Assembly (NCBI GenBank): GCA_964187785.1
Contig: OZ076420.1
Location: 15,934,001 to 15,998,000 of the forward strand
Direction of reading: 5' to 3'
DNA length: 64,000 nucleotides
Origin: Amphiscolops sp. MND2022
Taxonomy: Eukaryota
Below, in pieces: positions 17,170 to 42,973 of the stretch. Made by a program: the position numbers and the translations under genes. Below the pieces are notes generated by a model, which saw nothing but the letters and a program-made list of their open reading frames with translations, had not been told where the DNA came from and did not search any database. Every line of letters begins with the position of its first letter. Position 1 is the stretch's first letter.

Positions 17170-18100
17170 CGAACAATATCTACAATCTCTAATGGGGAAC
17201 AACAAACATCCTCAAATAACTCTTGACAAAAGCACTCTGGGATACTCAGCGCTAGACATAATAGATTATGAACGACCAAAATACCGAATAAAAGTTTGTA
17301 TTAAATGGTTCGACTCGGTACTACCTGACCATTAGAACAAGTGATTCTTACAACGCTCGACATCACCCCACGGAGCAGACTTCAAAGATGAAATACGCAT
17401 CAATATCGGAACGAAGACACACTTTTCGAAAATCAAACTGCCAATGCCAATTGCATATCAGGATATACAAAATTAAGTGAAGGATTCGCCGAAACCATCA
17501 CAAACCACATCAATGGACTACTAGAATATTGTCAGAAAACAAACGACTTCATTGGATCAGTCATTCCTTTTGGACAATGATTCTAAACAATTCAAATACA
17601 ACTTTGTCACAAGAAACACTTTTTTGAGAGCCTTACTATGGCACTATGGGAAGCAGGCGCTTCTAAACAATTTTGACATACTAAAAATGCCTAAGATTTG
17701 GGTTGAGTGTTGAGCTAATCAAAAGTTTCTATCATCGAATCATTTTGGCATTCAAAATGAAAGAGACTCTCCGCTAAAACTTGGAGTATCCACATAGTCA
17801 ATGAAGACAATTTATTCAGTAAGTTCAAAAATTGTACCAACTACTTTAGCCACGTGAGATTGGCAAGTAATTCAAGTCAAGTAGTCTAGAATTTGATCTT
17901 GGGACCAGTTGAGTCAAGCTGACGCAAGACATTATAGGTCCCGATTTGCCGAAAGAATCAGGAACAGCCAAGAACAACCAATGAAGATGCATCACAATGG
18001 AAGACTGCCCACAATCAGCGGACCAACAATTGCAACTGAATGAACAGAACATACAAACCGAGAGAAAGCTGAAAGTGCATGTGAGAAAGGAGGTACAGAA
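17170..18100 (+). pseudogene. Degenerate retroelement-like coding relic including an OARD1/Poa1p-like macrodomain fragment
   Basis: 17413-17580 reads EDTLFENQTANANCISGYTKLSEGFAETITNHINGLLEYCQKTNDFIGSVIPF, then after a frameshift WxNDSKQFKYNFVT; resembles macrodomain motifs HCISxDxxMxxGxA and YNLVT. Multiple stops and frameshifts. Confidence 0.45.
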
Positions 18101-18107
18101 ACGTTAA

Positions 18108-19771
18108 ACATTTCGACGATGAGAAGACGATCTAAACTGAAAATTGACTAAAAAAACTGTTTTTTTAAAACCATTCCTTTACAACTAAAATCATCGGACC
18201 GAAAGTACTTATATGCTTGAAAAGGGTACATATGGCACATCACGAGACTTGTGTGGCCCAGTGAGACTAAATGCACAACATTTCGACGACGAGAAAACGA
18301 TCAAAACTGAAATATACCTACAAAACCTGTTTTTTGGGTACCATTTCTGAAATACTGAGATCAACGGACCGAAAGTCTTTATATGGTTGAAAACGGTACA
18401 TATGGCACATCTGTGTACTAAAAGTGCAAATTTGGTAATCCGTCAAACACGAAAATACGTACACATCATCTTAAAAACGTATAGGGCTCAAATTTTTGGC
18501 TAAAACGGAGTATGACTAGACCCAACAGTAACGTTGTAGGCATTTTCAAGCTTTCCGAGTGAAAAACTAACTCAAACATAGCGAGTTTAGGTACTAAAAG
18601 TAGTTTTTTTTGGTAATCTGTCAAACTCGACACAGAGGCGAAGCCGTGCTTCGCAAACACTTGCAAAAAAGTTGGGAACTTTTGAAGAAAACCAAATAAG
18701 CAATATCATACGGAGAACCAAGGGTAAAAGGACATTGTTACAATTTTACAGCGCCAAAAAAAACCACGGGGATACGCATAAATCTCGAAAACCATTCCTC
18801 CCCAACTGGAAACAGCAAAAAACCCATCATTTTCAACCGAATACCTTTCAAAAATTAGAAAATTGAGGAAATTTTTTTTCGAAATTTTTCGAAAAAAATT
18901 TTTGGTCTCCGGTAAGTCGCATAGTGCCGAAAACCTTGAGCAGTCGTTTATGCTCGCAAAACGTTTCGTTTCTAGTAAAAATTGAGGGGGGCTTTGATGG
19001 AAACAAATTAGACAAAAAGAAAAAACACCGGTCTTTACAAAAAACAAAAATCGGATATAGAGTGTTGGGCCTGAGAAAACCTACATTTAAGACAAAAGTT
19101 ATTCATTTTCAAAAATCTCACAATGCCGAAAACTGTAAAAGGGGGCTCTTTGAGATTTTTAAACATCCATTCTTTTGCGAAATTTGAAAAAAAAATTGAA
19201 GGGGGACCCTTTGGAGACTTTGAAAAATTTTCAAAAAAACAAAAAAATGAAAATTTTTAACATCATCGTTCTGTTGCACATAAACAAAAAAATTGAAGGG
19301 AGGAACCTCTGGGGACATTTAAAAATTTTCGAAAATAAGTCTCAAAAAGCCGAAAAGGGGGGGGAGACTCCCCAGTCTTATTGTCAAAAAAAGTGAGAAT
19401 CTTCTGCTTGAAAAAATGTTAAAAAATTAGCGCATAGGCACGGGTTCGAACCCGGACCCTCTGGGTTGAAAAGCAAGCATCTTACCGCTAGACCAAAAAA
19501 GTCTGAATTATGCGACTTGCGGTCTGAAATGAGAGAGTTGTCGCGCGGAAAAAAACTTGCACTTTCCCATAACACTTGCTTATCGCAAGTGTAAAAAGAC
19601 GTACACATCACATTTAAAACGTATAGGGATCAAATTTTTGGCTATAGCCGAGTATAAATAGGCCCAACAGTAGTGTTTTAGGCAATTTCAAGCTTCCCGA
19701 GTGAAAAACTTACTCAAACATAGCGAATTTTGGTACTAAAAGTGTAGTTTTTTTGGTGACCTGTCAAACTC
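18108..19771. repeat. Satellite-like composite repeat with ~170-bp modules (present in all four units)
   Basis: 170-bp module ACATTTCGACGATGAGAAGACG...ACTAAATGCACA (extra copy in units 2 and 4); related ~170-bp direct repeats at ~18458-18628 and ~19600-19771. Confidence 0.75.
19430..19500 (-). pseudogene. tRNA-Glu(TTC)-like segment (SINE head or tRNA pseudogene); copies at 30219-30289, 40839-40909, 51661-51731
   Basis: Minus strand TGGTCTAGCGGTAAGATGCTTGCTTTTCAACCCAGAGGGTCCGGGTTCGAACCC resembles eukaryotic tRNA-Glu(TTC); A and B boxes present; acceptor stem does not pair. Confidence 0.6.
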
Positions 19772-19975
19772 TAAAAGACATACACATCAACTGAAAGTCT
19801 GGCTGATGCACTCACAACAGCCGTCAACGTTTTTACTTTCAAAGAAAAAATAAAACTTACAAAATCAAATAAACCTTGGTTTGACAAAGATCTAAAGAAA
19901 AGCATAATCCGACGAAATTTCGCGTTTAACAGATACAAGCGATATCGCACTCCGTCTAACAAAACTAAATACACA
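19772..19975 (+). mobile_element. LINE ORF2 fragment (endonuclease-RT linker, CR1/L2/Jockey-like); repeated in each unit
   Basis: Reads TESLADALTTAVNVFTFKEKIKLTKSNKPWFDKDLKKSIIRRNFAFNRYKR, matching the typical KPWxxxxLKxxIxxKN linker. Confidence 0.6.
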
Positions 19976-20555
19976 ACATCGATTCAAACCACACATACAC
20001 CTTACGCACACAACTTCACAACTGAGTTGAATCAGTGTTAGTTGGTTCGAACTAGGGCAATGGGGTGGTGATCTGATGTTCACATACATATCACAACACA
20101 ACACGCCACAACACAGTTCTGATCATCAACTCAAGAGATAGAGTTAATAGAGTAGTAGCAGTATGAGTTAGGTTAGTCACTACCACATTTCAGCTCAGCT
20201 GAGCGTTCTCGTTCGTTTTTCATTTGTCGACACTTTTCGCGGAATATGCATGTGCAAAATTAAACTCGGATGGATTTTCAGTAGTTTATTTTGAAATAGA
20301 TATCTAAACTCTTGCTAAAGTGGGAATATCTTTTAGATAACTTGATGTTCCTCAATCTTGTGAAGCCACAAGGAAGTTTAGTGACTGTTAACTGGGATGG
20401 CCAATTTGTTTCCGAAGACAATTATATTACTAACTATTGCTTTTCTGCAATTTTTAAAAAGGTTTGAATCTAAGCAGTTCTTCTACAGCGGTCAATACCT
20501 CACCGTTTGACAACTAAGCTTTCAAACTAAGCAGTTCTTCTACAGCGGTCAATAC

Positions 20556-20667
20556 TTCTTCTTCTTCTTATGGTAGTCAACCCGACGGGGTTCCCATCTG
20601 TTGTCCACAGCTCCTGAGATGTCTTCGGAGGTTTGTTGCAGCCTGCGGTACTTTACAAGAAGGGCAT
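20556..20667 (-). mobile_element. 112-bp 5'-truncated retroposon insertion with (GAA)n tail; repeated in each unit
   Basis: Flanked by 10-bp direct repeat CGGTCAATAC (20546-20555, 20668-20677); (TTC)n at the left end. Confidence 0.75.
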
Positions 20668-20853
20668 CGGTCAATACCTCACAGGAAAACAAACCTTCGT
20701 CATGTGCAATACTTTTATTACACGTATTACACTACGACTGTCATACTACGACAAAATACTATATACAATAGTACCAAAATATTCATAATTGATTCATGAA
20801 AAAAATATTCATAATATTCATAAAATGAAAAACAGGGAATACAATCAATGTTT

Positions 20854-20894
20854 ATTCTGAGCGCTTTCGCACAATATGTGCATCATCAGAGAAT
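20854..20894 (-). ncRNA. Minimal type I hammerhead ribozyme motif (unit 1, minus)
   Basis: AUUCU-CUGAUGA-U-GCACA-UAU-UGUGC-GAAA-GCGC-UC-AGAAU: 5-bp stem I, 5-bp stem II, palindromic stem III AGCGCU, CUC cleavage triplet. Confidence 0.75.
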
Positions 20895-21415
20895 CATATA
20901 ACCTGAAATGGTCGTCATCATTGCAAACCAGTTAAAACATAAATAAACAAACAACATAAAAAAGCAACAGAAATAGAACATGGCTATGTACTAATCTCGC
21001 CGATTTAAACCGGAACAGAGAAAAGTGTCGATCACAACTTCAGGGTGAGCTGCCGCTGCCTGTATTCTTCGCGTTGGTTCAACTTCGGTTGTCTTCTTGC
21101 GATATACAGGGTGTTGCGTAACAAATAAAATCTGAATGAAAAGCATGAGTCAGTTTTTTGATGTAGTAAAACAAACAAAGGTTGCTTTTTAAAATTGTTC
21201 CCGCAAACTGAGAATTGGTGAATGGATTTTTCGGCCAAACAATACAAAAAAGGGTTTGCTATCTTGAAACCTGATATATACATTGTTGATTGTATTATTG
21301 ACTACTCCCTTTCTTCTTGTTACGAACTGTATTAACCAATTGAATTTACAGTTTCTTTACAGGGCCTCAAGTGTTAGTAATCATTTCAATGATGACGACC
21401 ATTTCAGGTTATATG

Positions 21416-21456
21416 ATTCTCTGATGATGCACATATTGTGCGAAAGCGCTCAGAAT
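21416..21456 (+). ncRNA. Minimal type I hammerhead ribozyme motif (unit 1, plus)
   Basis: Same 41-nt motif in inverted orientation. Confidence 0.75.
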
Positions 21457-21568
21457 AAACATTGATTGTATTCCCTGTTTTTCATTCTGCGGGTATCAAT
21501 GTTACTACCAACATCACTTTGGAGGAAGATATTACTGCAAAGAGACATTTGGAATATTCATAAAAGAT

Positions 21569-23869
21569 TCATAAATGAGGAAGCGATGGAAGCGAGTCCA
21601 TTATTGAGGCTCGTTTGGCGGCATCCAGTGGTCGGTAGACATGAATGATCCTAAACATAAAATTGACGTTTTGTTAATATCCGATCGCTATATGCCACTT
21701 AAAATACATTTTTGAAACATTTTGATGCATTTCTGAAAAACTTCAGATTAAATATATACGGGAGCAAAATATTGTTTTTGAAATAAAAAGCGCATTTCGT
21801 TGTAATTTTCGACAGAAAGTTAGACGCGAACGTTACTTACACGCTCCGGACCATGAACCATGCAATGACCATTGCATCCACTGAAAACTTTCGCTCGTTT
21901 TCGATCGCGAAAGCTTGCAAGAATAAGCCTTTCAAAGTGGCTTTTTCAGCATCATCGTTCAAAGTTTGAAGACTGCTGTGACTCTCGCGAAGTTGTTGCA
22001 GCCGCGAAAATCTGGCGAACTGAATTTGGTACACAGGTTTCTTCTTCAGTTGCCGCGATTGTGAACTAAATAGAAAACAGCAAATGATGACCCATAAACT
22101 GCGCTTCATTAATAAAAACACTTTGGAACTGTCAGAATCGGGTAAATTATGTGATTTGTCACTTACATATTGGATCCTTCGATGTGGTCTCCCTCCCCGA
22201 CCAGCTGTAAGAGCTCTGCCAACAAATCCCGTGCAAGGGGTAGTTTGCAAGTCCTCTTGTCCGGACTTTTCTGAAGGATTAGTGCCTTCCACAGATTCAC
22301 CCCCCAAGCAAATTCCTCGTCAGCAACTGATTGCATGGGTGGAAGAACGGGTGCACAGCTGGAAGAACTGGTAGCAGAGGTACTGGTGGCAACCTAAACA
22401 TAAAATATCTATATCAACAAAATTGAAAACACGCAGATTTTCTGTATTCGGTGCAATATATATTCTGTATTCAGATATTCAGATATTCTGCAATATCTGT
22501 ATTCGGTGCAGAGTGGCGGCAGAAATCGGATATCAACAAATTGACAGTTGACCCCATGGATGGCTGGGCAGTGGGCACTTTTACTTACATTTGTGTTGAT
22601 CTCGATACTGCACTGGACTTGTGGACTGGTACTAGTATTAGCAAATTCCTCGTCAGCAACTGATTGCAGAGGTGGAAGAACGGGTTCACATGTCGAAGAA
22701 CTGGTAGAGGTACTGATGTCAACCTAAACATAAAATATCTATAACAAAATTGAAACCACGCAGATTTCCATTTTCTGTATTCGCTGTATTCGGCGAAGAA
22801 GGCTGTTTTTTTAATTTTCAGAAAATGACGGCCAGCTTCTTGTTTTTTGAACGCAGAGTGGCGGTGTAAATCGGATATCAACAAATTATTTTATTGAAAT
22901 TTTACTTCGCTGGCTCTGAAGGCAAGGTGTTTTTCCAAGTCCCTCTGATAATCGTCCGGGGTCAACAATCGGGCCTTGTAGACAATCGTAACACCAGCTT
23001 CTGTCCAAGGTATTAGAACATGGTCGTTTCCACACACGTTGTTAATTTCGCTGAGCCGCCGCATTCCAGTGGTATCGACCATCTCGTGAAGGGCAAACAT
23101 CCCCGGATCGCCCGCACACGTCTCTGACAAATCCTCAGTGTATCTGATGATCAAATTCACAGTCTTTTTCTTGGGGCTCTAAACATATATCATTGATAGT
23201 ATGATATCCAACAAAATTGAACATTAATCACTCAGATTTCCCTTTTCTGTATTCGGCGAAGAAGGCTGTTTTTTAATTTTCAGATGCTGACGCCCAGCTT
23301 CTTGTTTTCGAAAGAAGAGTTGCGGTAGAAATCAACATCAACATTACTTTATTGAAATTTTCGGATACGACAGAGTACCGACAAAAACATACGTGACTTG
23401 GAAAAGGAATGTCAAAGAAAACGTACCTCAAGAAAGAGCACAACGTTCGTGAAAGATGGCATTCCATCAGTCACACTCGTTTCCCTGACGTACAGGGGTC
23501 GTTTTGCTGGATAAGCCGACAACGAGAAAGCACCAGCTGGGACGTCCATTGGAACTGCGACCATTTTGACAAGATGATTCTGAAAAGACGGTGAATATGA
23601 AAATAGGCGAATATGAAAATCGGTGAATATGAATCAGGGACTGGAAATTATTAATTGCACTTATAATTTTCTAAAAAACGAAAAAAAATAATTAATTTTA
23701 ATTGTAAATTCCTTCCAATTAATTGCAACAATTGTAAATTCAGAACAAATCACTCATCATCAATTATGGCATTTGCAGTATCAACTGACCACAATTCAGA
23801 ATTAGCATACAAAAACAATTGCTCTTCAAAATGCAAAGGTGACAAGTTCTCCCGATATTCTGGATCCAT
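21569..23869 (-). CDS. Spliced orphan protein-coding gene, copy 1 (about 360-400 aa, no recognisable family)
   Basis: Exons 23579-23427, 23178-22906, 22723-22589, 22393-22167, 22065-21841, 21650-21569 (TGA); all five introns GT-AG with matching phases (0,0,0,2,2); 1095 nt open. Upstream ATG exon 23869-~23753 (MDPEYRENLS...IIDDE) follows an AAG acceptor, but its donor is unresolved. Confidence 0.8.
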
Positions 23870-24187
23870 CTTTGGAAATTGTAGGATAATTGAGAACGTA
23901 GTCGCATGAAATGTTAAATTATCCAATAAATTGATTTCGAATTTTTCACAATTGAATAATTTATATTGCAAATCGAAAAACATCACAACCTTGCCTTTGT
24001 CGGTCTGCCTTTGTCGGTCTGCCCTAATCGGCCTTTGCGTGGCTGCTCTCAAAGCTTGTTCTTCTGTGATGTCTTGTGATGTCTTGTGATGAGGTCTTGA
24101 TGACAGCGTACACAAAGAACGATCAATTACTTGAACCAGCCATGAAAACTGTCAACCTCCCGTCAGTCACGTCAGATCTCGGAAAAA

Positions 24188-27100
24188 TTGCTCAATGACA
24201 TCCCAGTCTCTAAACACAAGCGCGAAGAGATAGCAAGGCAGAACGATGTAGCAATGCGACTCGCTAGGCAGAAGCAAGAGTTGGAATTTGAATTGCTTCA
24301 CGAAGAAAATCGTAAACAACTAGCAGAAGCACATCTTGTGGAATTGGAACTTACAGAAGATCTCTCAGAAACAAACGCAGACTTTCAGGAATTCTTGTCA
24401 CGCCTAAGCGGAGCGGGTGTAGCTGACGGGACGCGAAGGATTAAGGACTGGGTTGACAGTTCACCAACTGCAATTGATGTTGTCAATCTAACCGATGTAG
24501 TGAACTCTGTCGCCTCCACAACCCCAATAACGACAACTTCGACTGCGGAAGCACTTGTGCCAGAACCAATGCTAAAGCCGGCGCCAGCAATTTCAATTGA
24601 GCCAACAAGTGTACACTCCTTTCCCAACGTCCTTCAGCGAAAAAGTGCAAATGGTGCAACACCAACCCCACCGATGATTGTCGTGCAACAACCACAACCG
24701 ACCATGAAGGTAACACAAGCAAGTACCGTCAACGCACCAGTCATAACACAATCTTTGCCAAAATTTACACGTACGTACGCGATGCCGACTAACCATCCCC
24801 TGCCAAATACGACATCCTGGACCTTTCCCATTGGACCAGTTCAGCCGTTGACCTAAGTACCAACAGTTGTTTTACCCTACCAACGAATTAACTGACACTG
24901 GCAACGAGCAAACCAATTGCTCAGTCCCCGGATTGTACTGTTCCGACCATACCCGTAACGAAGGGAGGCACCGTCTACTGTGTACAACCAACTACTACAT
25001 GTACCTCTGCTATACCGTTTGCAACCACGCCACCTGCAGCATCCCTCCGTCCAACGACAGCTACATTTATACCAACTGCAATGTCCACTTTGCCGCAACC
25101 AAGTACAAACGGCTTCTCCGTACAAGACTTAGCGTCAACCAGGAAGGACCACCTACCCGAATGCCAGTTGCACAGTACAGTGGCTACCCAAAGCAGTGGC
25201 ATGAGTGGTTCGGTTGACCGACGATGTGAAATTGACGTACTTAAAGACTCTTGTGACAGGCAAAACCGAAACCGCTATCGCGGAATTCTCCTACTGCGGT
25301 GCGATGTACAAAGATGCTCTCAAGACCTTGGAACGAAAGTGCGGGCAATCACAGGCTGTTGTATCCGATAAGTGTTCCGGTAACTCAATTACCTTCAAGA
25401 CCTCTGCAGCGCTTCATTGCTTGGCCAGGCACTGCAGACAATTCCACCCAATATGAAAGAGGCATGGTCACTACACACTATGGAGCCAGCATTGGATAGA
25501 CCAACATTGATCGATTTCAACGAATGGCCCTTGGACAAGGCGGAAGCCCACGAGCGTATGAAATCAACGTCTTCTAATGTGAATCCTTAAACTCTAGGCA
25601 ATGTGAACGTTGTCAAAACCAAGACAGCATCAAAACCATTCGCTGTCACAACTTCGTCACATCGACAAACCAGCTTTTCGATAGCAAAACCTAAAATCTA
25701 CTCTCAAAGTGTGCCGCGTGCGCAGAAGATCACCCACTTTGGAAACGCCTGACTTTCGGAAAAAAAGACACCGACAGAGAGAGCAAAACTGGTAACTCAA
25801 ACTAAATTGTACTTTTCAGTTATTAGGCCAGTTCACTCGCTCAGACAGTACCCGCAACCCCGCAAGTGTACTAAAGAAGGATGTGGAAGTACACACAACA
25901 CATTCTTACACGATCGGAAAAAGTCTTCAAGAAGCAATCACAGTCCGGGAACCAAGCAGACACTAAAACATCTGACTGCATTGGGATCACTACTACCTGT
26001 GGACAATCAGTTGAAAGCTCAATTCTACCTTCCGTGACTGACGTCAAAGGCTTGATAGCGGTGACTGAAATTGAACTGCCTTCATCAGATAAGTCTGAGA
26101 AAACGTTTGCACTCTGTGATTCGGCTTCGTAGCCACTCCGGGGTCTCTTTTAAACTAGCAAAAAGATTGAATGTTCACGGCCGACCAACCAAGCTAACGG
26201 TCCACGGTATCACCTCGAACCAACTCATAGAAATGCACATGGTGGAGCTCAAGTTGACACCTGTTCTTTCGGGTGACTCGTGATCGCCGTTCACTGACGA
26301 CTTAATGTCAGGAAAAATCTTAACGAGGGAACCGACGTTATTGATGTCGATTCTTTGAAAACAAAGTACCCTAACCTCGAACCGATCTCTTTGACACAAT
26401 ACAGTCACGCTGACGTGGAAATGATCCTCGGTCAGGATGTGTTCAGCTTAATACGCCCACTGGAGAATCTTGATGCCAACCGTGAGAACACCCCAGTTGC
26501 CGTCGTTTTACCGTTGGGCTGGGTATTGAGTGATCCACGTCCATCGTCCTCAGGTTTCGTTTCTACCTGTCTTAAAACCGTTGCCTGTAACCAAAGTCTC
26601 GACACCGAACTAGTCGACCAAACCTGCAGCTGGTACGATATGGTGTCGTACGGAGGGTATAAACAAAAAGACTCCCTTTCCGCATCCGATGTGAGAGCGA
26701 CCAGGTTACTTGAAGAAACAACCCACCACGATGGTTACCGATACCAAGTGGGAAAACCGATGAAGTAGAGTTGAAATCATTAGAACGGCGTCTCAGTAAA
26801 GAACCCGGACTGAAACAACATTACTACAAAACTATCCAAGACGACTTGGCAAAGGGTTATATTGTTCCAATCGACAAATTTGAATGTTTCAAAGTGGACA
26901 ACAACCACGAGTGGTACTTGCCGCACCACCCTGTAGTTCACCTGCATCAAGCCGCCAAAGTTCGAAGAGTGCTCATTGGAGCTTCAAAGTTCCAAGGTCA
27001 TTCTCTGAATAATGGATTTCTAACCGGTCCCGACTTGTTACAGAGTCTGATCCACATACTTCTTCGGTTTCGCCAGCACAAGTATGCTGTGTCTGCCGAC

Positions 27101-28412
27101 ATCGAAGGACTGTTCCGCCAAATTTGGGTCATTCAAAAAGACCAACTATCACCTCGTTTTCTTTGGCGCGAAGATCCTGCCTCCCAAATTGCTGTGTACC
27201 AGTTTTTTTCGGCATAAAATTGGATCAAAAGACTCTCCCACCTGTGCGAACTATGCACTAAAACGCACTGCGGCAGACAACCAGACCGACTACCCCGGAG
27301 CAGCCGAGAGTGTCCATCGTAACTTCTAAATGGACGACTACCTAGAATCGAGCTCCACGATTGGAGAAGCAGCCAAGAAAGCGAAAGCTTTGGTTAAACT
27401 ACTCGAAAGAGGCAGATCCAGGTTAACAAAGTTCGTATCCAATGTTCCTGAATTCCCTAATGATCTCGAACCTACTTGTAAACCATCGTCGACCGCGGTA
27501 AAGATCATACCGAAGACCGGGGATTCTTCCCATGTTTTGGGAATGAAATGGAACCACTTGTCAGACAGTCTCGTAGTTAGTCGCGGGACAAGTACGGATA
27601 TCAATCGAACTTTAGCACAAAAGATCATCCTAAGCCTTGTGCCCGCTGTGTATGACCCGATAGGCCTCGTCGCACCCTACACAGTGTCGGCACGGATATT
27701 GCTGAAAGATATCCGGCGACTACATGGTCAACAGTGGGGCGACAACCTGCCCGGGGAAACAGTAACCAAGTTTAACGAATGGAGCAAAGATCTAGCGAAA
27801 CTGAGTCAAATCGAAATCCCGCGCAGCTACTTCGAGGGACCATTCACAGCGTTGGAACTGCACATGTTTGGCGACAGTTTGCAAGACATCTTCACCCCAG
27901 TTGCCTTTCTTCAAGCAAAAGTGACAACCCAACATACATGGAACCGAATTAGCCTTCGTCTTCGGAAAAGCCAGAGTGGCTCCAATGAAAGCTGTTACCA
28001 TTCCAAAACTCGAGTTGCAAGCTTCATTACTTGCCTCGCGCCTCCGGAAAGATATCCAAAGCGCACTTACTCTCCGAATCTAAAAAACTTTTATGTAGAC
28101 GGACAGCACAACCGTCCTTCAATGGCTTCATTCAGTCGAAAAACAACCTGTTTTCATTGCCAACAGTGTGGCCGAGATTTTAGATCAGACAACAGTCGAC
28201 GAATGGAATTATGTCCAAACGTGCGACAACCCCGCGGATGCCGGTACAAGTGGACTACCAGCCAGCGCCCTCTGCGACAGCCCCTGAACACCGACTTTCC
28301 ATTCCAGACGTCAAACGAGATCCAGTTAAGACTAAAAGGCAACAAAGCAGATGCTAAAACATCGGATCAAGTAGACATTGAGACAACCGCAATGGCAGCT
28401 GTGACCACGACA
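24188..28412 (+). mobile_element. Degenerate BEL/Pao LTR retrotransposon internal region (gag-PR-RT-RNase H), truncated at the array junction; unit 1
   Basis: Gag KLTYLKTLVTGK; Cys/His knuckle KCTKEGCGSTHNTFLH; protease ALCDSA; RT WYLPHH, TGPDLL, SADIE, GSKDSPTCA, with YMDD mutated to stop-MDD; Pao RNase H YDPIG, ELHMFGDS. Many frameshifts and stops; no LTR recognised. Confidence 0.93.
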
Positions 28413-31400
28413 ATAGTCAATGAAGACAATTTATTCAGTAAGTTCAAAAATTGTACCAACTACTTTAGCCACGTGAGATTGGCAAGTAATTCAAGTCAAG
28501 TAGTCTAGAATTTGATCTTGGGACCAGTTGAGTCAAGCTGACGCAAGACATTATAGGTCCCGATTTGCAGAAAGAATCAGGAACAGCCAAGAACAACCAA
28601 TGAAGATGCATCACAATGGAAGACTGCCCACAATCAGCGGACCAACAATTGCAACTGAATGAACAGAACATACAAACCGAGAGAAAGCTGAAAGTGCATG
28701 TGAGAAAGGAGGTACAGAAACGTTAAACATTTCGACAATGAGAAGACGATCTAAACTGGAAATTGACTAAAAAAACTGTTTTTTTTAGAACCATTCCTTT
28801 ACAACTAAAATCATCGGACCGAAAGTACTTATATGCTTGAAAAGGGTACATATGGCACATCACGAGACTTGTGTGGCCCAGTGAGACTAAATGCACAACA
28901 TTTCGACGATGAGAAGACGATCTAAACTGAAAATTGACTAAAAAAACTGTTTTTTTAGAACCATTCCTTTACAACTAAAATCATCGGACCGAAAGTACTT
29001 ATATGCTTGAAAAGGGTACATATGGCACATCACGAGACTTGTGTGGCCCAGTGAGACTAAATGCACAACATTTCGACGACGAGGAAACGATCAAAACTGA
29101 AATATACCTACAAAACCTGTTTTTTGGGTACCATTTCTGAAATACTGAGATCAACGGACCGAAAGTCTTTATATGGTTGAAAACGGTACATATGGCACAT
29201 CTGTGTACTAAAAGTGCAAATTTGGTAATCCGTCAAACACGAAAATACGTACACATTATCTTAAAAACGTATAGGGCTCAAATTTTTGGCTAAAACGGAG
29301 TATGACTAGACCCAACAGTAACGTTGTAGGCATTTTCAAGCTTTCCGAGTGAAAAACTAACTCAAACATAGCGAGTTTAGGTACTAAAAGTAGTTTTTTT
29401 GGTAATCTGTCAAACTCGACACAGAGGCGAAGCCGTGCTTCGCAAACACTTGCAAAAAAGTTGGGAACGTTTGAAGAAAACCAAATAAGCAATATCATAC
29501 GGAGAACCAAGGGTAAAAGGACATTGTTACAATTTTACAGCGCCAAAAAAAACCACGGGGATACGCATAAATCTCGAAAACCATTCCTCCCCAACTGGAA
29601 ACAGCAAAAAACCCATCACTTTCAACCGAATACCTTTCAAAAATTAGAAAATTGAGGAATTTTTTTTCGAAATTTTTCGAAAAAAATTTTTGGTCTCCGG
29701 TAAGTCGCATAGTGCCGAAAACCTTGAGCAGTCGTTTATGCTCGCAAAACGTTTCGTTTCTAGTAAAAATTGAGGGGGGCTTTGATGGAAACAAATTAGA
29801 CAAAAAGAAAAAACACCGGTCTTTACAAAAAACAAAAATCGGATATAGAGTGTTGGGCCTGAGAAAACCTACATTTAAGACAAAAGTTATTCATTTTCAA
29901 AAATCTCACAATGCCGAAAACTGTAAAAGGGGGCTCTTTGAGATTTTTAAACATCCATTCTTTTGCGAAATTTGAAAAAAAAATTGAAGAGGGACCCTTT
30001 GGAGACTTTGAAAAATTTTCAAAAAAAAACAAAAAAATGAAAATTTTTAACATCATCGTTCTGTTGCACATAAACAAAAAAATTGAAGGGAGGAACCTCT
30101 GGGGACATTTAAAAATTTTCGAAAATAAGTCTCAAAAAGCCGAAAAGGGGGGGAGACTCCCCAGTCTTATTGTCGAAAAAAGTGAGAATCTTCTGCTTAA
30201 AAAAATGTTAAAAAATTAGCGCATAGGCACGGGTTCGAACCCGGACCCTCTGGGTTGAAAAGCAAGCATCTTACCGCTAGACCAAAAAAGTCTGAATTAT
30301 GCGACTTGCGGTCTGAAATGAGAGAGTTGTCGCGCGGAAAAAAACTTGCACTTTCCCATAACACTTGCTTATCGCAAGTGTAAAAAGACGTACACATCAC
30401 ATTTAAAACGTATAGGGATCAAATTTTTGGCTATAGCCGTGTATAAATAGGCCCAACAGTAGGAAGGCAATTTCAAGCTTCCCGAGTGAAAAACTTACTC
30501 AAACATAGCGAATTTTGGTACTAAAAGTGTAGTTTTTTTTGGTGACCTGTCAAACTCTAAAAGACATACACATCAACTGAAAGTCTGGCTGATGCACTCA
30601 CAACAGCCGTCAACGTTTTTACTTTCAAAGAAAAAATAAAACTTACAAAATCAAATAAACCTTGGTTTGACAAAGATCTAAAGAAAAGCATAATCCGACG
30701 AAATTTCGCGTTTAACAGATACAAGCGATATCGCACTCCGTCTAACAAAACTAAATACACAACATCGATTCAAACCACACATACACCTTACGCACACAAC
30801 TTCACAACTGAGTTGAATCAGTGTTAGTTGGTTCGAACTAGGGCAATGGGGTGGTGAGCTGATGTTCACATACATATCACAACACAACACGCCACAACAC
30901 AGTTCTGATCATCAACTCAAGAGATAGAGTTAATAGAGTAGTAGCAGTATGAGTTAGGTTAGTCACTACCACATTTCAGCTCAGCTGAGCATTCTCGTTC
31001 GTTTTTCATTTGTCGACACTTTTCGCGGAATATGCATGTGCAAAATTAAACTCGGATGGATTTTCAGTAGTTTATTTTGAAATAGATATCTAAACTCTTG
31101 CTAAAGTGGGAATATCTTTTAGATAACTTGATGTTCCTCAATCTTGTGAAGCCACAAGGAAGTTTAGTGACTGTTAACTGGGATGGCCAATTTGTTTCCG
31201 AAGACAATTATATTACTAACTATTGCTTTTCTGCAATTTTTAAAAAGGTTTGAATCTAAGCAGTTCTTCTACAGCGGTCAATACCTCACCGTTTGACAAC
31301 TAAGCTTTCAAACTAAGCAGTTCTTCTACAGCGGTCAATACTTCTTCTTCTTCTTATGGTAGTCAACCCGACGGGGTTCCCATCTGTTGTCCACAGCTCC

Positions 31401-31639
31401 TGAGATGTCTTCGGAGGTTTGTTGCAGCCTGCGGTACTTTACAAGAAGGGCATCGGTCAATACCTCACAGGAAAACAAAACTTCGTCATGTGCAATACTA
31501 TTATTACACGTATTACACTACGACTGTCATACTACGACAAAATACTATATACAATAGTACCAAAATATTCATAATTGATTCATGAAAAAAATATTCATAA
31601 TATTCATAAAATGAAAAACAGGGAATACAATCAATGTTT

Positions 31640-31680
31640 ATTCTGAGCGCTTTCGCACAATATGTGCATCATCAGAGAAT
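31640..31680 (-). ncRNA. Minimal hammerhead motif (unit 2, minus)
   Basis: Identical to unit 1. Confidence 0.75.
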
Positions 31681-32202
31681 CATATAACCTGAAATGGTCG
31701 TCATCATTGCAAACCAGTTAAAAACATAAATAAACAAACAACATAAAAAAGCAACAGAAATAGAACAAGGCTATGTACTAATCTCGCCGATTTAAACCGG
31801 AACAGAGAAAAGTGTCGATCACAACTTCAGGGTGAGCTGCCGCTGCCTGTATTCTTCGCGTTGGTTCAACTTCGGTTGTCTTCTTGCGATATACAGGGTG
31901 TTGCGTAACAAATAAAATCTGAATGAAAAGCATGAGTCAGTTTTTTGATGTAGTAAAACAAACAAAGGTTGCTTTTTAAAATTGTTCCCGCAAACTGAGA
32001 ATTGGTGAATGTATTTTTCGGCCAAACAATACAAAAAAGGGTTTGCTATCTTGAAACCTGATATATACATTGTTGATTGTATTATTGACTACTCCCTTTC
32101 TTCTTGTTACGAACTGTATTAACCAATCGAATTTACAGTTTCTTTACAGGGCCTCAAGGGTTAGTAATCATTTCAATGATGACGACCATTTCAGGTTATA
32201 TG

Positions 32203-32243
32203 ATTCTCTGATGATGCACACATTGTGCGAAAGCGCTCAGAAT
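32203..32243 (+). ncRNA. Minimal hammerhead motif (unit 2, plus)
   Basis: Core intact; stem II loop UAU changed to CAU. Confidence 0.75.
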
Positions 32244-32355
32244 AAACATTGATTGTATTCCCTGTTTTTCATTCTGCGGGTATCAATGTTACTACCAACA
32301 TCACTTTGGAGGAAGATATTACTGCAAAGAGACATTTGGAATATTCATAAAAGAT

Positions 32356-34656
32356 TCATAAATGAGGAAGCGATGGAAGCGAGTCCATTATTGAGGCTCG
32401 TTTGGCGGCATCCAGTGGTCGGTAGACATGAATGATCCTAAACATAAAATTGACGTTTTGTTAATATCCGATCGCTATATGCCACTTGAAATACATTTTT
32501 GAAACATTTTGATGCATTTCTGAAAAACTTCAGATTAAATATATACGGGAGCAAAATATTGTTTTTGAAATAAAAAGCGCATTTCGTTGTAATTTTCGAC
32601 AGAAAGTTAGACGCGAACGTTACTTACACGCTCCGGACCATGAACCATGCAATGACCATTGCATCCACTGAAAACTTTCGTTCGTTTTCGATCGCGAAAG
32701 CTTGCAAGAATAAGCCTTTCAAATTGGCTTTTTCAGCATCATCGTTCAAAGTTTGAAGACTGCTGTGACTCTCGCGAAGTTGTTGCAGCCGCGAAAATCT
32801 GGCGAACTGAATTTGGTACACAGGTTTCTTCTTCAGTTGCCGCGATTGTGAACTAAATAGAAAACAGCAAATGATGACCCATAAACTGCGCTTCATTAAT
32901 AAAAACACTTTGGAACTGTCAGAATCGGGTAAATTATGTGATTTGTCACTTACATATTGAATCCTTCGATGTGGTCTCCCTCCCCGACCAGCTGTAAGAG
33001 CTCTGCCAACAAATCCCGTGCAAGGGGTAGTTTGCAAGTCCTCTTGTCCGGACTTTTCTGAAGGATTAGTGCCTTCCACAGATTCACCCCCCAAGCAAAT
33101 TCCTCGTCAGCAACTGATTGCATGGGTGGAAGAACGGGTGCACAGCTGGAAGAACTGGTAGCAGAGGTACTGGTGGCAACCTAAACATAAAATATCTATA
33201 TCAACAAAATTGAAAACATGCAGATTTTCTGTATTCGGTGCAATATATATTCTATATTCAGATATTCAGATATTCTGCAATATCTGTATTCGGTGCAGAG
33301 TGGCGGCAGAAATCGGATATCAACAAATTGACAGTTGACCCCATGGATGGCTGGGCAGTGGGCACTTTTACTTACATTTGTGTTGATCTCGATACTGCAC
33401 TGGACTTGTGGACTGGTACTAGTATTAGCAAATTCCTCGTCAGCAACTGATTGCAGGGGTGGAAGAACGGGTTCACATGTCGAAGAACTGGTAGAGGTAC
33501 TGATGTCAACCTAAACATAAAATATCTATAACAAAATTGAAACCACGCAGATTTCCATTTTCTGTATTCGCTGTATTCGGCGAAGAAGGCTGTTTTTTTA
33601 ATTTTCAGAAAATGACGGCCAGCTTCTTGTTTTTTGAACGCAGAGTGGCGGTGTAAATCGGATATCAACAAATTATTTTATTGAAATTTTACTTCGCTGG
33701 CTCTGAAGGCAAGGTGTTTTTCCAAGTCCCTCTGATAATCGTCCGGGGTCAACAATCGGGCCTTGTAGACAATCGTAACACCAGCTTCTGTCCAAGGTAT
33801 TAGAACATGGTCGTTTCCACACACGTTGTTAATTTCGCTGAGCCGCCGCATTCCAGTGGTATCGACCATCTCGTGAAGGGCAAACATCCCCGGATCGCCC
33901 GCACACAACTCTGACAAATCCTCAGTGTATCTGATGATCAAATTCACAGTCTTTTTCTTGGGGCTCTAAACATATATCATTGATAGTATGATATCCAACA
34001 AAATTGAACATTAATCACTCAGATTTCCCTTTTCTGTATTCGGCGAAGAAGGCTGTTTTTTAATTTTCAGATGCTGACGCCCAGCTTCTTGTTTTCGAAA
34101 GAAGAGTTGCGGTAGAAATCAACATCAACATTACTTTATTGAAATTTTCGGATACGACAGAGTACCGACAAAAACATACGTGACTTGGAAAAGGAATGTC
34201 AAAGAAAACGTACCTCAAGAAAGAGCACAACGTTCGTGAAAGATGGCATTCCATCAGTCACACTCGTTTCCCTGACGTACAGGGGTCGTTTTGCTGGATA
34301 AGCCGACAACGAGAAAGCACCAGCTGGGACGTCCATTGGAACTGCGACCATTTTGACAAAATGATTCTGAAAAGACGGTGAATATGAAAATAGGCGAATA
34401 TGAAAATCGGTGAATATGAATCAGGGACTGGAAATTATTAATTGCACTTATAATTTTCTAAAAAACGAAAAAAAATAATTAATTTTAATTGTAAATTCCT
34501 TCCAATTAATTGCAACAATTGTAAATTCAGAACAAATCACTCATCATCAATTATGGCATTTGCAGTATCAACTGACCACAATTCAGAATTAGCATACAAA
34601 AACAATTGCTCTTCAAAATGCAAAGGTGACAAGTTCTCCCGATATTCTGGATCCAT
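32356..34656 (-). CDS. Orphan gene, copy 2
   Basis: Same exon structure at +10787; only missense or silent changes seen in the six downstream exons. Confidence 0.78.
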
Positions 34657-34974
34657 CTTTGGAAATTGTAGGATAATTGAGAACGTAGTCGCATGAAATG
34701 TTAAATTATCCAATAAATTGATTTCGAATTTTTCACAATTGAATAATTTATATTGCAAATCGAAAAACATCACAACCTTGCCTTTGTCGGTCTGCCTTTG
34801 TCGGTCTGCCCTAATCGGCCTTTGCGTGGCTGCTCTCAAAGCTTGTTCTTCTGTGATGTCTTGTGATGTCTTGTGATGAGGCCTTGATGACAGCGTACAC
34901 AAAGAACGATCAATTACTTGAACCAGCCATGAAAACTGTCAACCTCCCGTCAGTCACGTCAGATCTCGGAAAAA

Positions 34975-37900
34975 TTGCTCAATGACATCCCAGTCTCTAA
35001 ACACAAGCGCGAAGAGATAGCAAGGCAGAACGATGTAGCAATGCGACTCGCTAGGCAGAAGCAAGAGTTGGAATTTGAATTGCTTCACGAAGAAAATCGT
35101 AAACAACTAGCAGAAGCACATCTTGTGGAATTGGAACTTACAGAAGATCTCTCAGAAACAAACGCAGACTTTCAGGAATTCTTGTCACGCCTAAGCGGAG
35201 CGGGTGTAGCTGACGGGACGCGAAGGATTAAGGACTGGGTTGACAGTTCACCAACTGCAATTGATGTTGTCAATCTAACCGATGTAGTGAACTCTGTCGC
35301 CTCCACAACCCCAATAACGACAACTTCGACTGCGGAAGCACTTGTGCCAGAACCAATGCGAAAGCCGGCGCCAGCAATTTCAATTGAGCCAACAAGTGTA
35401 CACTCCTTTCCCAACGTCCTTCAGCGAAAAAGTGCAAATGGTGCAACACCAACCCCACCGATGATTGTCGTGCAACAACCACAACCGACCATGAAGGTAA
35501 CACAAGCAAGTACCGTCAACGCACCAGTCATAACACAATCTTTGCCAAAATTTACACGTACGTACGCGATGCCGACTAACCATCCCCTGCCAAATACGAC
35601 ATCCTGGACCTTTACCATCCGACCAGTTCAGCCGTTGACCTAAGTACCAACATTTGTTTTACCGTACCACCGAATTAACTGACACTGGCAACGAGCAAAC
35701 CAATTGCTCAGTCCCCGGATTGTACTGTTCCGACCATACCCGTAACGGAGGGAGGCACCGTCTACTGTGTACAACCAACTACTACATGTACCTCTGCTAT
35801 ACCGTTTGGAACCACGCCACCTGCAGCATCCCTCCGTCCAACGACAGCTACATTTATACCAACTGCAATGTCCACTTTGCCGCAACCAAGTACAAACGGC
35901 TTCTCCGTACAAGACTTAGCGTCAACCAGGAAGGACCACCTACCCGAATGCCAGTTGCACAGTACAGTGGCTACCCAAAGCAGTGGCATGAGTGGTTCGG
36001 TTGACCGACGATGTGAAATTGACGTACTTAAAGACTCTTGTGACAGGCAAAACCGAAACCGCTATCGCGGAATTCTCCTACTGCGGTGCGATGTACAAAG
36101 ATGCTCTCAAGACCTTGGAACGAAAGTGCGGGCAATCACAGGCTGTTGTATCCGATAAGTAATCCGGTAACTCAATTACCTTCAAGAACTCTGCAGCGCT
36201 TCATTGCTTGGCCAGGCACTGCAGACAATTCCACCCAATATGAAAGAGGCATGGTCACTACACACTATGGAGCCAGCATTGGATAGACCAACATTGATCG
36301 ATTTCAACGAATGGCCCTTGGACAAGGCGGAAGCCCACGAGCGTATGAAATCAACGTCTTCTAATGTGAATCCTTAAACTCTAGGCAATGTGAACGTTGT
36401 CAAAACCAAGACAGCATCAAAACCATTCGCTGTCACAACTTCGTCACATCGACAAACCAGCTTTTCGATAGCAAAACCTAAAATCTACTCTCAAAGTGTG
36501 CCGCGTGCGCAGAAGATCACCCACTTTGGAAACGCCTGACTTTCGGAAAAAAAGACACCGACAGAGAGAGCAAAACTGGTAACTCAAACTAAATTGTACT
36601 TTTCAGTTATTAGGCCAGTTCACTCGCTCAGACAGTACCCGCAACCCCGCAAGTGTACTAAAGAAGGATGTGGAAGTACACACAACACATTCTTACACGA
36701 TCGGAAAAAGTCTTCAAGAAGCAATCACAGTCCGGGAACCAAGCAGACACTAAAACATCTGACTGCATTGGGATCACTACTACCTGTGGACAATCAGTTG
36801 AAAGCTCAATTCTACCTTCCGTGGCTGACGTCAAAGGCTTGATAGCGGTGACTGAAATTGAACTGCCATCATCAGATAAGTCTGAGAAAACGTTTGCACT
36901 CTGTGATTCGGCTTCGGAGCCACTCCGGGGTCTCTTTTAAACTAGCAAAAAGATTGAATGTTCACGGCCGACCAACCAAGCTAACGGTCCACGGTATCAA
37001 CTCGAACCAACTCATAGAAATGCACATGGTGGAGCTCAAGTTGACACCTGTTCTTTCGGGTGACTCGTGATCGCCGTTCACTGACGACTTAATGTCAGGA
37101 AAAATCTTAACGAGGGAACCGACGTTATTGATGTCGATTCTTTGAAAACAAAGTACCCTAACCTCGAACCGATCTCTTTGACACAATACAGTCACGCTGA
37201 CGTGGAAATGATCCTCGGTCAGGATGTGTTCAGCTTAATACGCCCACTGGAGAATCTTGATGCCAACCGTGAGAACACCCCAGTTGCCGTCGTCTTACCG
37301 TTGGGCTGGGTATTGAGTGATCCACGTCCATCGTCCTCAGGTTTCGTTTCTACCTGTCTCAAAACCGTTGCCTGTAACCAAAGTCTCGACACCGAACTAG
37401 TCGACCAAACCTGCAGCTGGTACGATATGGTGTCGTACGGAGGGTATAAACAAAAAGACTCCCTTTCCGCATCCGATGTGAGAGCGACCAGGTTACTTGA
37501 AGAAACAACCCACCACGATGGTTACCGATACCAAGTGGGAAAACCGATGAAGTAGAGTTGAAATCATTAGAACGGCGTCTCAGTAAAGAACCCGGACTGA
37601 AACAACATTACTACAAAACTATCCAAGACGACTTGGCAAAGGGTTATATTGTTCCAATCGACAAATTTGAATGTTTCAAAGTGGACAACAACCACGAGTG
37701 GTACTTGCCGCACCACCCTGTAGTTCACATGCATCAAGCCGCCAAAGTTCGAAGAGTGCTCATTGGAGCTTCAAAGTTCCAAGGTCATTCTCTGAATAAT
37801 GGATTTCTAACCGGTCCCGACTTGTTACAGAGTCTGATCCACATACTTCTTCGGTTTCGCCAGCACAAGTATGCTGTGTCTGCCGACATCGAAGGACTGT

Positions 37901-42200: not shown

Positions 42201-42258
42201 ATGAAAAAAATATTCATAATATTCATAAAATGAAAAACAGGGAATACAATCAATGTTT

Positions 42259-42299
42259 ATTCTGAGCGCTTTCGCACAATATGTGCATCATCAGAGAAT
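42259..42299 (-). ncRNA. Minimal hammerhead motif (unit 3, minus)
   Basis: Identical to unit 1. Confidence 0.75.
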
Positions 42300-42820
42300 C
42301 ATATAACCTGAAATGGTCGTCATCATTGCAAACCAGTTAAAACATAAATAAACAAACAACATAAAAAAGCAACAGAAATAGAACATGGCTATGTACTAAT
42401 CTCGCCGATTTAAACCGGAACAGAGAAAAGTGTCGATCACAACTTCAGGGTGAGCTGCCGCTGCCTGTATTCTTCGCGTTGGTTCAATTTCAGTTGTCTT
42501 CTTGCGATATACAGGGTGTTGCGTAACAAATAAAATCTGAATGAAAAGCATGAGTCAGTTTTTTGATGTAGTAAAACAAACAAAGGTTGCTTTTTAAAAT
42601 TGTTCCCGCAAACTGAGAATTGGTGAATGGATTTTTCGGCCAAACAATACAAAAAAGGGTTTGCTATCTTGAAACCTGATATATACATTGTTGATTGTAT
42701 TATTGACTACTCCCTTTCTTCTTGTTACGAACTGTATTAACCAATCGAATTTACAGTTTCTTTACAGGGCCTCAAGTGTTAGTAATCATTTCAATGATGA
42801 CGACCATCTCAGGTTATATG

Positions 42821-42861
42821 ATTCTCTGATGATGCACACATTGTGCGAAAGCGCTCAGAAT
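42821..42861 (+). ncRNA. Minimal hammerhead motif (unit 3, plus)
   Basis: Core intact; loop variant CAU shared with unit 2. Confidence 0.75.
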
Positions 42862-42973
42862 AAACATTGATTGTATTCCCTGTTTTTCATTCTGCGGGTA
42901 TCAATGTTACTACCAACATCACTTTGGAGGAAGATATTACTGCAAAGAGACATTTGGAATATTCATAAAAGAT

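What the first reader, a model, noticed from the sequence alone, without database searches (positions are those of the whole stretch)
20824..21486. Eight minimal hammerhead ribozyme motifs, one on each strand per unit
Each arm of the 100-bp inverted repeat holds CUGAUGA...GAAA with 5-bp stems I and II and a 1-bp stem III closing a GCGC loop; AGCGCU is self-complementary. Penelope-associated minimal hammerheads with palindromic stem III are established to cleave as dimers. Tandem amplification puts same-sense copies 10.7 kb apart, so read-through transcripts could supply partners in cis and be cut to unit length (inference). There is one extra U between A9 and stem II.
Basis: partly seen in the sequence, partly recalled or inferred. 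Interest (0 to 1): 0.75.

Follow-up and report, generated by a model that had tools for sequence, protein, structure and literature searches.

The report
Penelope-type minimal hammerheads, amplified relic
A short, truncated insertion of a Penelope-like jumping gene carries that family's usual tiny hammerhead ribozyme motif on each of its inverted arms; a later four-fold tandem duplication of the host DNA made two motifs into eight, so it is real but ordinary.

Summary
The 35-nt motif occurs eight times, once per strand in each of four 10.6-10.8 kb tandem units, inside 103-nt inverted-repeat arms. One copy (53087-53121, minus strand) has a core G5-to-A change, so seven are intact.

The motif has every published hallmark of Penelope-like-element (PLE) minimal hammerheads:
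- the CUGAUGA/GAAA core;
- one unpaired base between A9 and G10.1;
- a G10.1-C11.1 pair;
- a short helix I;
- a palindromic AGCGCU in place of helix III.

A descriptor search found none in 40 Mb of null sequence. A metagenome scan found the same architecture, with different stem sequences, upstream of a PLE-type reverse transcriptase. No Rfam hammerhead model matches.

The element is best read as a 5'-truncated head-to-head PLE insertion, about 729 bp with a one-sided 66-nt tail and an 11-13-nt target duplication. It entered before the segmental amplification, so the eight motifs are two motifs copied four times.

Nothing indicates selection or activity. The motifs vary as much as the rest of the unit. 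Any transcript spanning both arms would fold into a 103-bp hairpin. No RNA data exist.

Other notes of this scan report PLE hammerheads elsewhere in this genome.

The parts
17794..60698 (.). Tandem array of exactly four units (17794-28412, 28413-39205, 39206-49853, 49854-60698), 98.9-99.5% identical. Each unit carries one copy of the element.
20824..21552 (.). Unit-1 copy of the insertion: inverted-repeat-bounded core 20824-21486 (663 bp) plus a 66-nt one-sided extension ('tail') 21487-21552. No recognisable coding remnant inside.
20824..20926 (-). Left arm (103 nt), read outward on the minus strand. Differs from the right arm at one site that is fixed in all four units.
21384..21486 (+). Right arm (103 nt), read outward on the plus strand.
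21416..21456 (+). Minimal type-I hammerhead motif, unit 1 plus strand. Helix I 5' strand 21416-20, core CUGAUGA 21421-27, bulged U 21428, helix II 21429-41, GAA 21442-44, palindrome AGCGCU 21445-50, C17 21451, helix I 3' strand 21452-56. Predicted cut 21451/21452. AAUAAA at 21454-59.
20854..20894 (-). Same motif, unit 1 minus strand. Predicted cut 20859/20858.
31640..31680 (-). Motif, unit 2 minus strand, intact.
32203..32243 (+). Motif, unit 2 plus strand. Loop 2 U-to-C, fold unaffected.
42259..42299 (-). Motif, unit 3 minus strand, intact.
42821..42861 (+). Motif, unit 3 plus strand. Loop 2 U-to-C.
53086..53126 (-). Motif, unit 4 minus strand, with core G5-to-A (CUAAUGA). Fails the descriptor and is expected to be catalytically dead.
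53647..53687 (+). Motif, unit 4 plus strand, intact.
20813..20825 (.). Candidate target-site duplication, left copy (AATATTCATAAAA; its last 2 nt overlap the arm), in an AT-rich ATTCATAA-like micro-repeat.
21553..21565 (.). Candidate target-site duplication, right copy, 66 nt beyond the right arm.
31610..32273 (.). Unit-2 copy of the inverted-repeat-bounded element.
42229..42891 (.). Unit-3 copy of the inverted-repeat-bounded element.
53056..53717 (.). Unit-4 copy of the inverted-repeat-bounded element.

Best explanation
The 663-bp inverted-repeat element is a dead, heavily 5'-truncated insertion of a Penelope-like retroelement (PLE). With a 66-nt one-sided tail it spans about 729 bp. Two 3'-terminal (pseudo-LTR) fragments lie head to head with their 3' ends outward, the arrangement PLEs typically produce. 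Each fragment brings the family's minimal type-I hammerhead, which in the parent element lies in the pLTR and can only form an active site by pairing its palindromic AGCGCU with a second copy (a double hammerhead). The insertion landed in an AT-rich micro-repeat just downstream of a candidate minus-strand gene. The surrounding ~10.7 kb segment was later duplicated in tandem to four copies, turning two motifs into eight. At this locus the motifs are most likely passengers. They have drifted neutrally since amplification. If a transcript crosses both arms, they are locked in a 103-bp hairpin. Shown here: motif anatomy, non-random occurrence, inverted-repeat structure, amplification history, the same motif architecture next to PLE reverse transcriptase elsewhere, and the dimer and hairpin thermodynamics. 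Inferred: PLE origin of this particular copy, the tail and target-duplication boundaries, and lack of function.
For: [quoted passage not shown] The same paper reports dual min-HHRs on opposite strands 100-700 bp apart. Descriptor search: 7 hits in the window, 0 in 80 million null positions. The dimer minimum-free-energy fold reproduces the double hammerhead with a 6-bp helix III (-24.5 kcal/mol against 2 x -9.3). Independent relatives came from a pattern that left helix II free. Two of three distinct metagenome hits (L004, L005) have a bulged base, a perfect 5- or 4-bp helix II of different sequence, and a helix I of at least 4 bp. In L005 the motif lies upstream of two ORFs, the second an RT (RVT_1) with the PLE-diagnostic DKG motif (motif named). 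Many of its homologues carry GIY-YIG PF01541, and RT plus GIY-YIG is the PLE signature. PLE structure from the literature: frequent 5' truncation, an inverted 5'-truncated copy forming inverted repeats, an optional one-sided tail arising from two RT start sites, extension of both target strands, and AT-rich (ATT) or microsatellite targets. Here both arms end at the same nucleotide. There is a 66-nt extension on one side only, and a 13-nt direct repeat sits exactly at the left arm boundary (empirical background about 5e-4). No target duplication directly abuts the inverted repeat, which argues against a cut-and-paste TIR element. Relic status: the arm difference is fixed in all units, so the insertion predates the amplification. 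Variable columns are 1.28% over the unit, 1.8% in the element and 2 of 70 in the motifs, one of them G5-to-A. Scan notes report PLEs with hammerheads elsewhere in this genome (unchecked).
Against: No PLE coding remnant lies in or next to the element, and no second, diverged copy is in the window. PLE parentage of this copy therefore rests on the ribozyme type and the insertion architecture alone. No Rfam hammerhead model scores it, even at E<=10 on 61 nt. The tail is 66 nt, longer than the 30-40 nt reported. The target duplication lies in a locally repetitive ATTCATAA context. No RNA data could be obtained, so inactivity is inferred, not shown. The four units are too alike to give covariation within the locus.
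Confidence: 0.75

Rival explanations
1. The array is transcribed through, same-sense hammerheads 10.7 kb apart (or on separate transcripts) dimerise through AGCGCU, and the transcript is cut to unit length, as a giant retrozyme-like or satellite-like processing system.
For: Seven motifs are intact, same-sense copies are regularly spaced, and the dimer fold is thermodynamically possible. Short-helix-III hammerheads in tandem repeats are known to work as dimers.
Against: Each unit-length transcript carries the perfect antisense of its own ribozyme 460 nt upstream. The arm duplex of -178 kcal/mol out-competes the -24.5 kcal/mol dimer fold. PLE min-HHRs have very low activity even as adjacent dimers. 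There is no excess conservation, and one copy has lost G5. The array is a recent segmental duplication full of dead transposons. No RNA holder is on record.
Confidence: 0.04
2. A co-opted RNA module. A minus-strand transcript from the neighbouring candidate gene runs into the element. The two arms would form a long hairpin that either feeds small-RNA production against the PLE family or gates the minus-strand hammerhead and AAUAAA in the left arm for 3'-end formation.
For: Gene-like spliced ORF segments on the minus strand end near 21600, just upstream of the element. The whole element folds as a 103-bp perfect hairpin. An AAUAAA directly follows the motif on the ribozyme-sense strand. Another first-stage note proposes the same reading.
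Against: The gene is unverified, with no Pfam match and no RNA data. Inverted transposon copies form such hairpins by accident everywhere. There is no conservation signal.
Confidence: 0.1
3. A non-autonomous DNA transposon (MITE-like) or a simple DNA-level palindromic duplication that happens to contain a hammerhead-bearing fragment, not a direct product of PLE retrotransposition.
For: 103-nt terminal inverted repeats on a 663-bp non-coding body look like a MITE. The summed contig depth in the centre of the element is 2-3 times that of the flanks, hinting at further copies (noisy).
Against: No target duplication directly flanks the inverted repeat. The only significant direct repeat includes a one-sided 66-nt extension, which fits the PLE tail and not a TIR element. 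The arm ends point outward as 3' ends with a poly(A) signal about 27 nt inside, as expected for retro-copies.
Confidence: 0.08
4. A chance resemblance: the sequence is not hammerhead-derived at all.
For: No Rfam hammerhead family matches. The monomer's minimum-free-energy fold is not the hammerhead fold. There is no covariation within the locus.
Against: There were 0 descriptor hits in 80 million null positions. Four class-specific features that are not needed for a generic match are all present. The same architecture with compensating stems lies next to PLE RT genes.
Confidence: 0.03

Closest known systems
Minimal hammerheads (min-HHR) in the pseudo-LTRs of Penelope-like elements (Cervera and de la Pena 2014, PMC4209133; Lunse et al. 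2017, as cited in PMC6765202)
   Same: Type-I topology. Full CUGAUGA/GAAA/UH core. One unpaired nucleotide between A9 and G10.1. A G10.1-C11.1 pair. A 5-bp helix I. A palindromic helix III/loop 3 that can only form a real helix in a dimer. Occurrence as a pair on opposite strands a few hundred bp apart.
   Different: No PLE ORF accompanies this copy. Helix II is 5 bp, against 7-8 bp in the Schistosoma families. The copy has been multiplied by a host segmental duplication, not by transposition. Activity is untested.
PLE insertion architecture: inverted 5'-truncated copy plus a one-sided tail (Craig et al. 2021, PMC8557442; Frangieh et al. 2024, PMC11167929)
   Same: Inverted repeats with 3' ends outward. 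Both arms end at the same template position. An extension on one side only. An AT-rich, micro-repeat target containing ATT. A variable-length target duplication.
   Different: The tail is 66 nt, not 30-40 nt. Truncation is so deep that only about 560 nt of non-coding 3' region remains.
Newt, salamander and Schistosoma satellite hammerheads and metazoan non-LTR retrozymes (PMC7229834)
   Same: Type-I hammerheads with very short palindromic helix III that need a partner copy (double hammerhead).
   Different: Those sit in 150-450-bp head-to-tail repeats, have loop 1-loop 2 tertiary contacts and give abundant linear and circular RNAs. Here there is no short tandem repeat, the same-sense spacing is 10.7 kb, and no such loops exist.
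Rfam hammerhead families (Hammerhead_1, _3, _II, HH9, HH10)
   Same: The same catalytic core consensus.
   Different: No covariance model scores the sequence, even at E<=10. Helix III is missing and there is an inserted base.

Membership tests
PLE-type minimal hammerhead (min-HHR) | Conserved core C3-A9 (CUGAUGA), G12-A14 (GAA), A15.1-U16.1, H17 | tested here: met
   Present in 7 of 8 copies. The minus-strand copy of unit 4 has G5-to-A.
PLE-type minimal hammerhead (min-HHR) | Type-I topology with a short (4-5 bp) open helix I | tested here: met
   AUUCU/AGAAU, 5 bp. Feature named.
PLE-type minimal hammerhead (min-HHR) | [quoted passage not shown] | tested here: met
   Bulged U 21428 and pair G21429-C21441. 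Feature named.
PLE-type minimal hammerhead (min-HHR) | Palindromic 15.2-16.2/loop 3, so that helix III forms only between two copies | tested here: met
   AGCGCU. The dimer minimum-free-energy fold has a 6-bp intermolecular helix III at -24.5 kcal/mol. The hammerhead-competent monomer is -5.6, against a misfolded minimum of -9.3.
PLE-type minimal hammerhead (min-HHR) | Lies in the pLTR of a Penelope-like element (RT plus GIY-YIG ORF nearby) | tested here: inconclusive
   No ORF remnant at this locus. The architecture fits a truncated inverted PLE insertion. The same motif type lies upstream of a PLE-type RT in metagenome locus L005.
PLE-type minimal hammerhead (min-HHR) | Stems supported by compensatory variation across family members | tested here: inconclusive
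   The window copies are near-identical. L004 and L005 keep perfect helix II with different sequences (GCUAC/GUAGC, GGCC/GGCC) and a helix I of at least 4 bp. That is only three independent sequences, and the automatic alignment misplaces one gap.
PLE-type minimal hammerhead (min-HHR) | Self-cleavage (weak) as a dimer in vitro | not testable with these tools
   Needs transcription assays. No RNA runs hold the locus.
Rfam hammerhead families | Covariance-model score at or above the gathering threshold | tested here: not met
   No hit at gathering, none at E<=10 on 1.1 kb, and none at E<=10 on 61 nt.
Metazoan non-LTR retrozyme | Head-to-tail repeats of 150-450 bp, each with a canonical type-I hammerhead with loop-loop contacts, expressed as small linear and circular RNAs | tested here: not met
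   Only an inverted pair per unit. Same-sense spacing is 10.6-10.8 kb. There is no loop 1. Definition taken.
TIR DNA transposon / MITE | Terminal inverted repeats immediately flanked by a target-site duplication | tested here: not met
   Inverted repeats are present, but the flanks read ...CATAA and CTGCG... with no duplication. The only direct repeat lies 66 nt beyond one arm.

The most novel reading that the evidence does not exclude
The insertion has been co-opted by the amplified neighbouring gene. Its minus-strand transcript would end in the left arm, where the hammerhead and the adjacent AAUAAA lie. The antisense right arm would act as a lock that decides between ribozyme cleavage, polyadenylation and dicing of the hairpin. 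That would be a transposon-derived ribozyme switch in a 3' UTR, multiplied with the gene.
Probability: 0.05. Interest if true: 0.55.

Novelty: new member of a known kind. Interest (0 to 1): 0.2.

Why it matters
Very little beyond annotation. It adds one more instance of the PLE minimal hammerhead and of the inverted, tailed PLE insertion structure. It shows that the 'extra U' is a class hallmark and not a defect. It also shows that Rfam models miss this class, so descriptor searches are needed to annotate it. The natural G5-to-A copy is a ready-made negative control, and the built-in antisense arm makes the locus a convenient test case should anyone assay PLE hammerheads from this organism. 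If the 3'-UTR co-option reading were true, it would be a rare case of a retrotransposon ribozyme recruited for mRNA 3'-end control.

Tried and rejected
- Rfam at gathering and at E<=10 on 1.1 kb and on 61 nt gave only sub-threshold C/D-snoRNA noise, caused by the UGAUGA/CUGA words. I rejected these as chance.
- Sequencing-run search: four runs from one sample, all contigs with even depth and no splice joints, so DNA-like. They cannot show RNA ends. The contig breaks 30 nt inside each arm are only what a k=31 graph gives at a repeat boundary.
- Scan-notes look-up by sequence was blank.
- The first metagenome pattern, with helix II fixed, found nothing.
- A second pattern hit, L002/L003 (one sequence filed twice), has no helix II and was rejected as chance.
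- Small ORFs inside the element gave only sub-threshold Pfam noise.
- BLAST of the element against the window found no diverged copies.
- The Lunse et al. 2017 paper is not held.
- An exact-protein look-up, aimed at naming the organism, only placed the window's Pao-like ORF on a 169-kb contig of an ENA assembly.
- The structure-pair counting tool was not used, because the automatic alignment misplaced the gap in L005's helix II. Pairs were checked by script instead.

Full report
**What is there**

The stretch 20824-21486 is bounded by two 103-nt arms, 20824-20926 and 21384-21486. They are 99% complementary and 457 nt apart.

Each arm, read outward, contains this series:
- helix I 5' strand AUUCU;
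- core CUGAUGA;
- one extra U;
- a 5-bp helix II, GCACA/UGUGC, with loop UAU;
- GAA;
- the self-complementary hexamer AGCGCU;
- C;
- helix I 3' strand AGAAU.

The 35-nt core of this occurs eight times in the window and never in shuffles. There are four copies on each strand.

The predicted scissile bonds, 21451/21452 (+) and 20859/20858 (-), are in the right register.

One copy (53087-53121, minus strand) reads CUAAUGA. This is G5-to-A, a change at an invariant core position. The plus-strand copies of units 2 and 3 have a loop-2 U-to-C.

**Why there are eight**

Positions 17794-60698 are exactly four tandem units of 10.6-10.8 kb, 98.9-99.5% identical. The array ends 9 nt into what would be a fifth unit.

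The unit also holds:
- a decayed BEL/Pao retrotransposon (Peptidase_A17 3e-17, DUF1759);
- a very high-copy tRNA-derived SINE-like segment;
- gene-like spliced ORF pieces on the minus strand that end near 21600.

The single difference between left and right arms is the same in all four units. The inverted element therefore existed before the amplification. The finding is two motifs copied four times.

**Is the motif more than chance?**

I wrote a descriptor modelled on the published one. It requires CUGAUGA, zero or one bulged base, G10.1-C11.1, a helix II of at least 4 bp, GAAA, a palindromic loop of 0, 2 or 4 nt, U, H, and a helix I of at least 4 bp.

It finds the seven intact copies and nothing else in the window. 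It finds nothing in 40 Mb (both strands) of first-order Markov sequence with the window's composition. My hand estimate for a motif as good as this one is about 2e-12 per position, which is negligible even genome-wide.

**Which kind of hammerhead?**

No Rfam hammerhead model scores it, at gathering or at E<=10, even when only 61 nt are given.

Cervera and de la Pena (PMC4209133) defined a minimal hammerhead of Penelope-like elements (PLEs) that escaped canonical searches. The emergent features they list are exactly those seen here:
- a conserved G10.1-C11.1 pair;
- a helix I of 4-5 bp;
- palindromic 15.2-16.2 plus loop 3.

They also report pairs of such motifs 100-700 bp apart on opposite strands, attributed to truncated PLEs.

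Folding agrees with the dimer idea:
- The monomer's minimum-free-energy fold (-9.3 kcal/mol) is a misfold.
- The hammerhead-competent monomer without helix III is -5.6.
- Two copies give a minimum-energy structure of -24.5 that is the classic double hammerhead, with a 6-bp intermolecular helix III and helix I formed in trans.

**Independent relatives**

A metagenome scan used a pattern that fixed only the core, the AGCGCU and two helix-I pairs, and left helix II free. It returned three distinct sequences.

One (L002 = L003) has no helix II and is a chance hit.

The other two (L004, L005) have a bulged A, a perfect helix II of different sequence (GCUAC/GUAGC and GGCC/GGCC) and a helix I of at least 4 bp.

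In L005 the motif lies about 250 nt upstream of a 1016-aa ORF followed by a 692-aa ORF. The 692-aa ORF is a reverse transcriptase:
- RVT_1 at E 2e-4;
- weak matches to solved RTs;
- an ADKGG (DKG) motif, which the PLE literature uses as diagnostic;
- 1133 homologues, many of which carry the GIY-YIG endonuclease domain PF01541.

RT plus GIY-YIG is the PLE signature.

L004's ORF resembles L005's first ORF weakly (E 4e-6).

So this precise hammerhead variant is PLE-borne elsewhere. Its stems co-vary across the three sequences, although three sequences are few.

**What the 663-bp element is**

It has no coding remnant and no second copy in the window, so its parentage is inferred.

The inference rests on how PLEs insert:
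- Copies are usually 5'-truncated.
- The purified PLE protein cuts and extends both target strands.
- Reverse transcription starts at either of two internal sites, so a fraction of copies carry a one-sided tail.
- Targets are AT-rich (ATT) or microsatellite-like.

Features here that fit:
- Both arms end at the same nucleotide, pointing outward.
- An AAUAAA sits directly after helix I, 27 nt from the arm end.
- No target duplication abuts the arms.
- A 13-nt direct repeat, AATATTCATAAAA, lies at 20813-20825 (touching the left arm) and at 21553-21565 (66 nt beyond the right arm), within an ATTCATAA-like micro-repeat.

An 11-mer anchored in this way recurs at the required distance at about 5e-4 of positions in the non-redundant part of the window.

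The simplest reading is an insertion of about 729 bp. It consists of an inverted copy without tail and a direct copy with a 66-nt tail, flanked by an 11-13-nt target duplication. A cut-and-paste TIR element is not supported.

**Does it work here?**

Nothing says so.
- Since amplification, 1.28% of unit columns have varied, 1.8% of element columns, and 2 of 70 motif columns, one of which destroys G5.
- The plus-strand transcript of a whole element contains the exact antisense of its own ribozyme. The arms pair at -178 kcal/mol, and the element folds as a 103-bp hairpin at -265.8 kcal/mol. The same holds on the minus strand.
- Only a transcript that starts between the arms would leave a motif free.
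- Published PLE min-HHRs cleave weakly even as engineered dimers.
- For an active PLE, no RNA ends were seen at the ribozyme site, and cleavage was dispensable for insertion in vitro.

I could not test RNA ends. The only runs holding the locus are four contig sets from one sample, with even depth and no splice joints, so they are DNA-like.

**Verdict**

The classification as a Penelope-type minimal hammerhead is supported. The functional inference is not.

The locus is a new member of a known kind and a relic multiplied by a host duplication. Other first-stage notes of this scan report PLEs with hammerheads, and another paired-core case, on other pieces of the same genome. I could not check them.

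Noticed in passing
window 21454-21459 (+); L004 about 13 nt and L005 about 12 nt 3' of their motifs: In all three independent sequences a poly(A) signal (AAUAAA in the window and L004, AUUAAA in L005) lies 3-13 nt after the hammerhead cleavage site. By my own rough estimate this is unlikely by chance (about 0.035 each). It suggests that in this PLE group the ribozyme sits just before the transcript's polyadenylation site.
   Followed up: partly
window 19417-19597: A tRNA-derived SINE-like segment with a B-box-like GGTTCGAACCC on the minus strand. ARAGORN calls no tRNA. The summed contig depth is about 700 times that of the surrounding unit, and many contigs diverge at its edges, so it is a very high-copy repeat of this genome.
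   Followed up: partly
window 24188-28508 (+), and the same place in each unit: A decayed BEL/Pao LTR-retrotransposon gag-pol, broken into several frames (DUF1759 weak, Peptidase_A17 3e-17). It accounts for the GC-rich part of each unit.
   Followed up: partly
window 21600-23600 (-): Gene-like ORF segments on the minus strand with GTAAGT/GTACGT-type donors and TTTAG acceptors. They end about 40-50 nt before the candidate target duplication of the PLE insertion. There is no Pfam match. This is the subject of another first-stage note.
   Followed up: no
window 17794-17802 and 60690-60698; 18107-18449, 28727-29239, 50167-50680: The array ends 9 nt into a would-be fifth unit. A 170-nt segment near the unit start is present once in units 1 and 3 and twice in units 2 and 4, so units alternate in length. 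This hints at a two-step (2 x 2) duplication history.
   Followed up: partly
window 1037-1327 and 5509-5899; N run 5290-5489: Two further inverted repeats outside the array: 89-nt arms 113 nt apart, and 62-nt arms 267 nt apart. The second lies just after the 200-N gap. Neither contains a hammerhead-descriptor match.
   Followed up: no
L005 147-5272 (-): A metagenomic PLE with an unusually large upstream ORF (1016 aa, no Pfam match) ahead of a 692-aa RT ORF. That RT ORF itself shows no GIY-YIG hit, although many homologues have one.
   Followed up: partly
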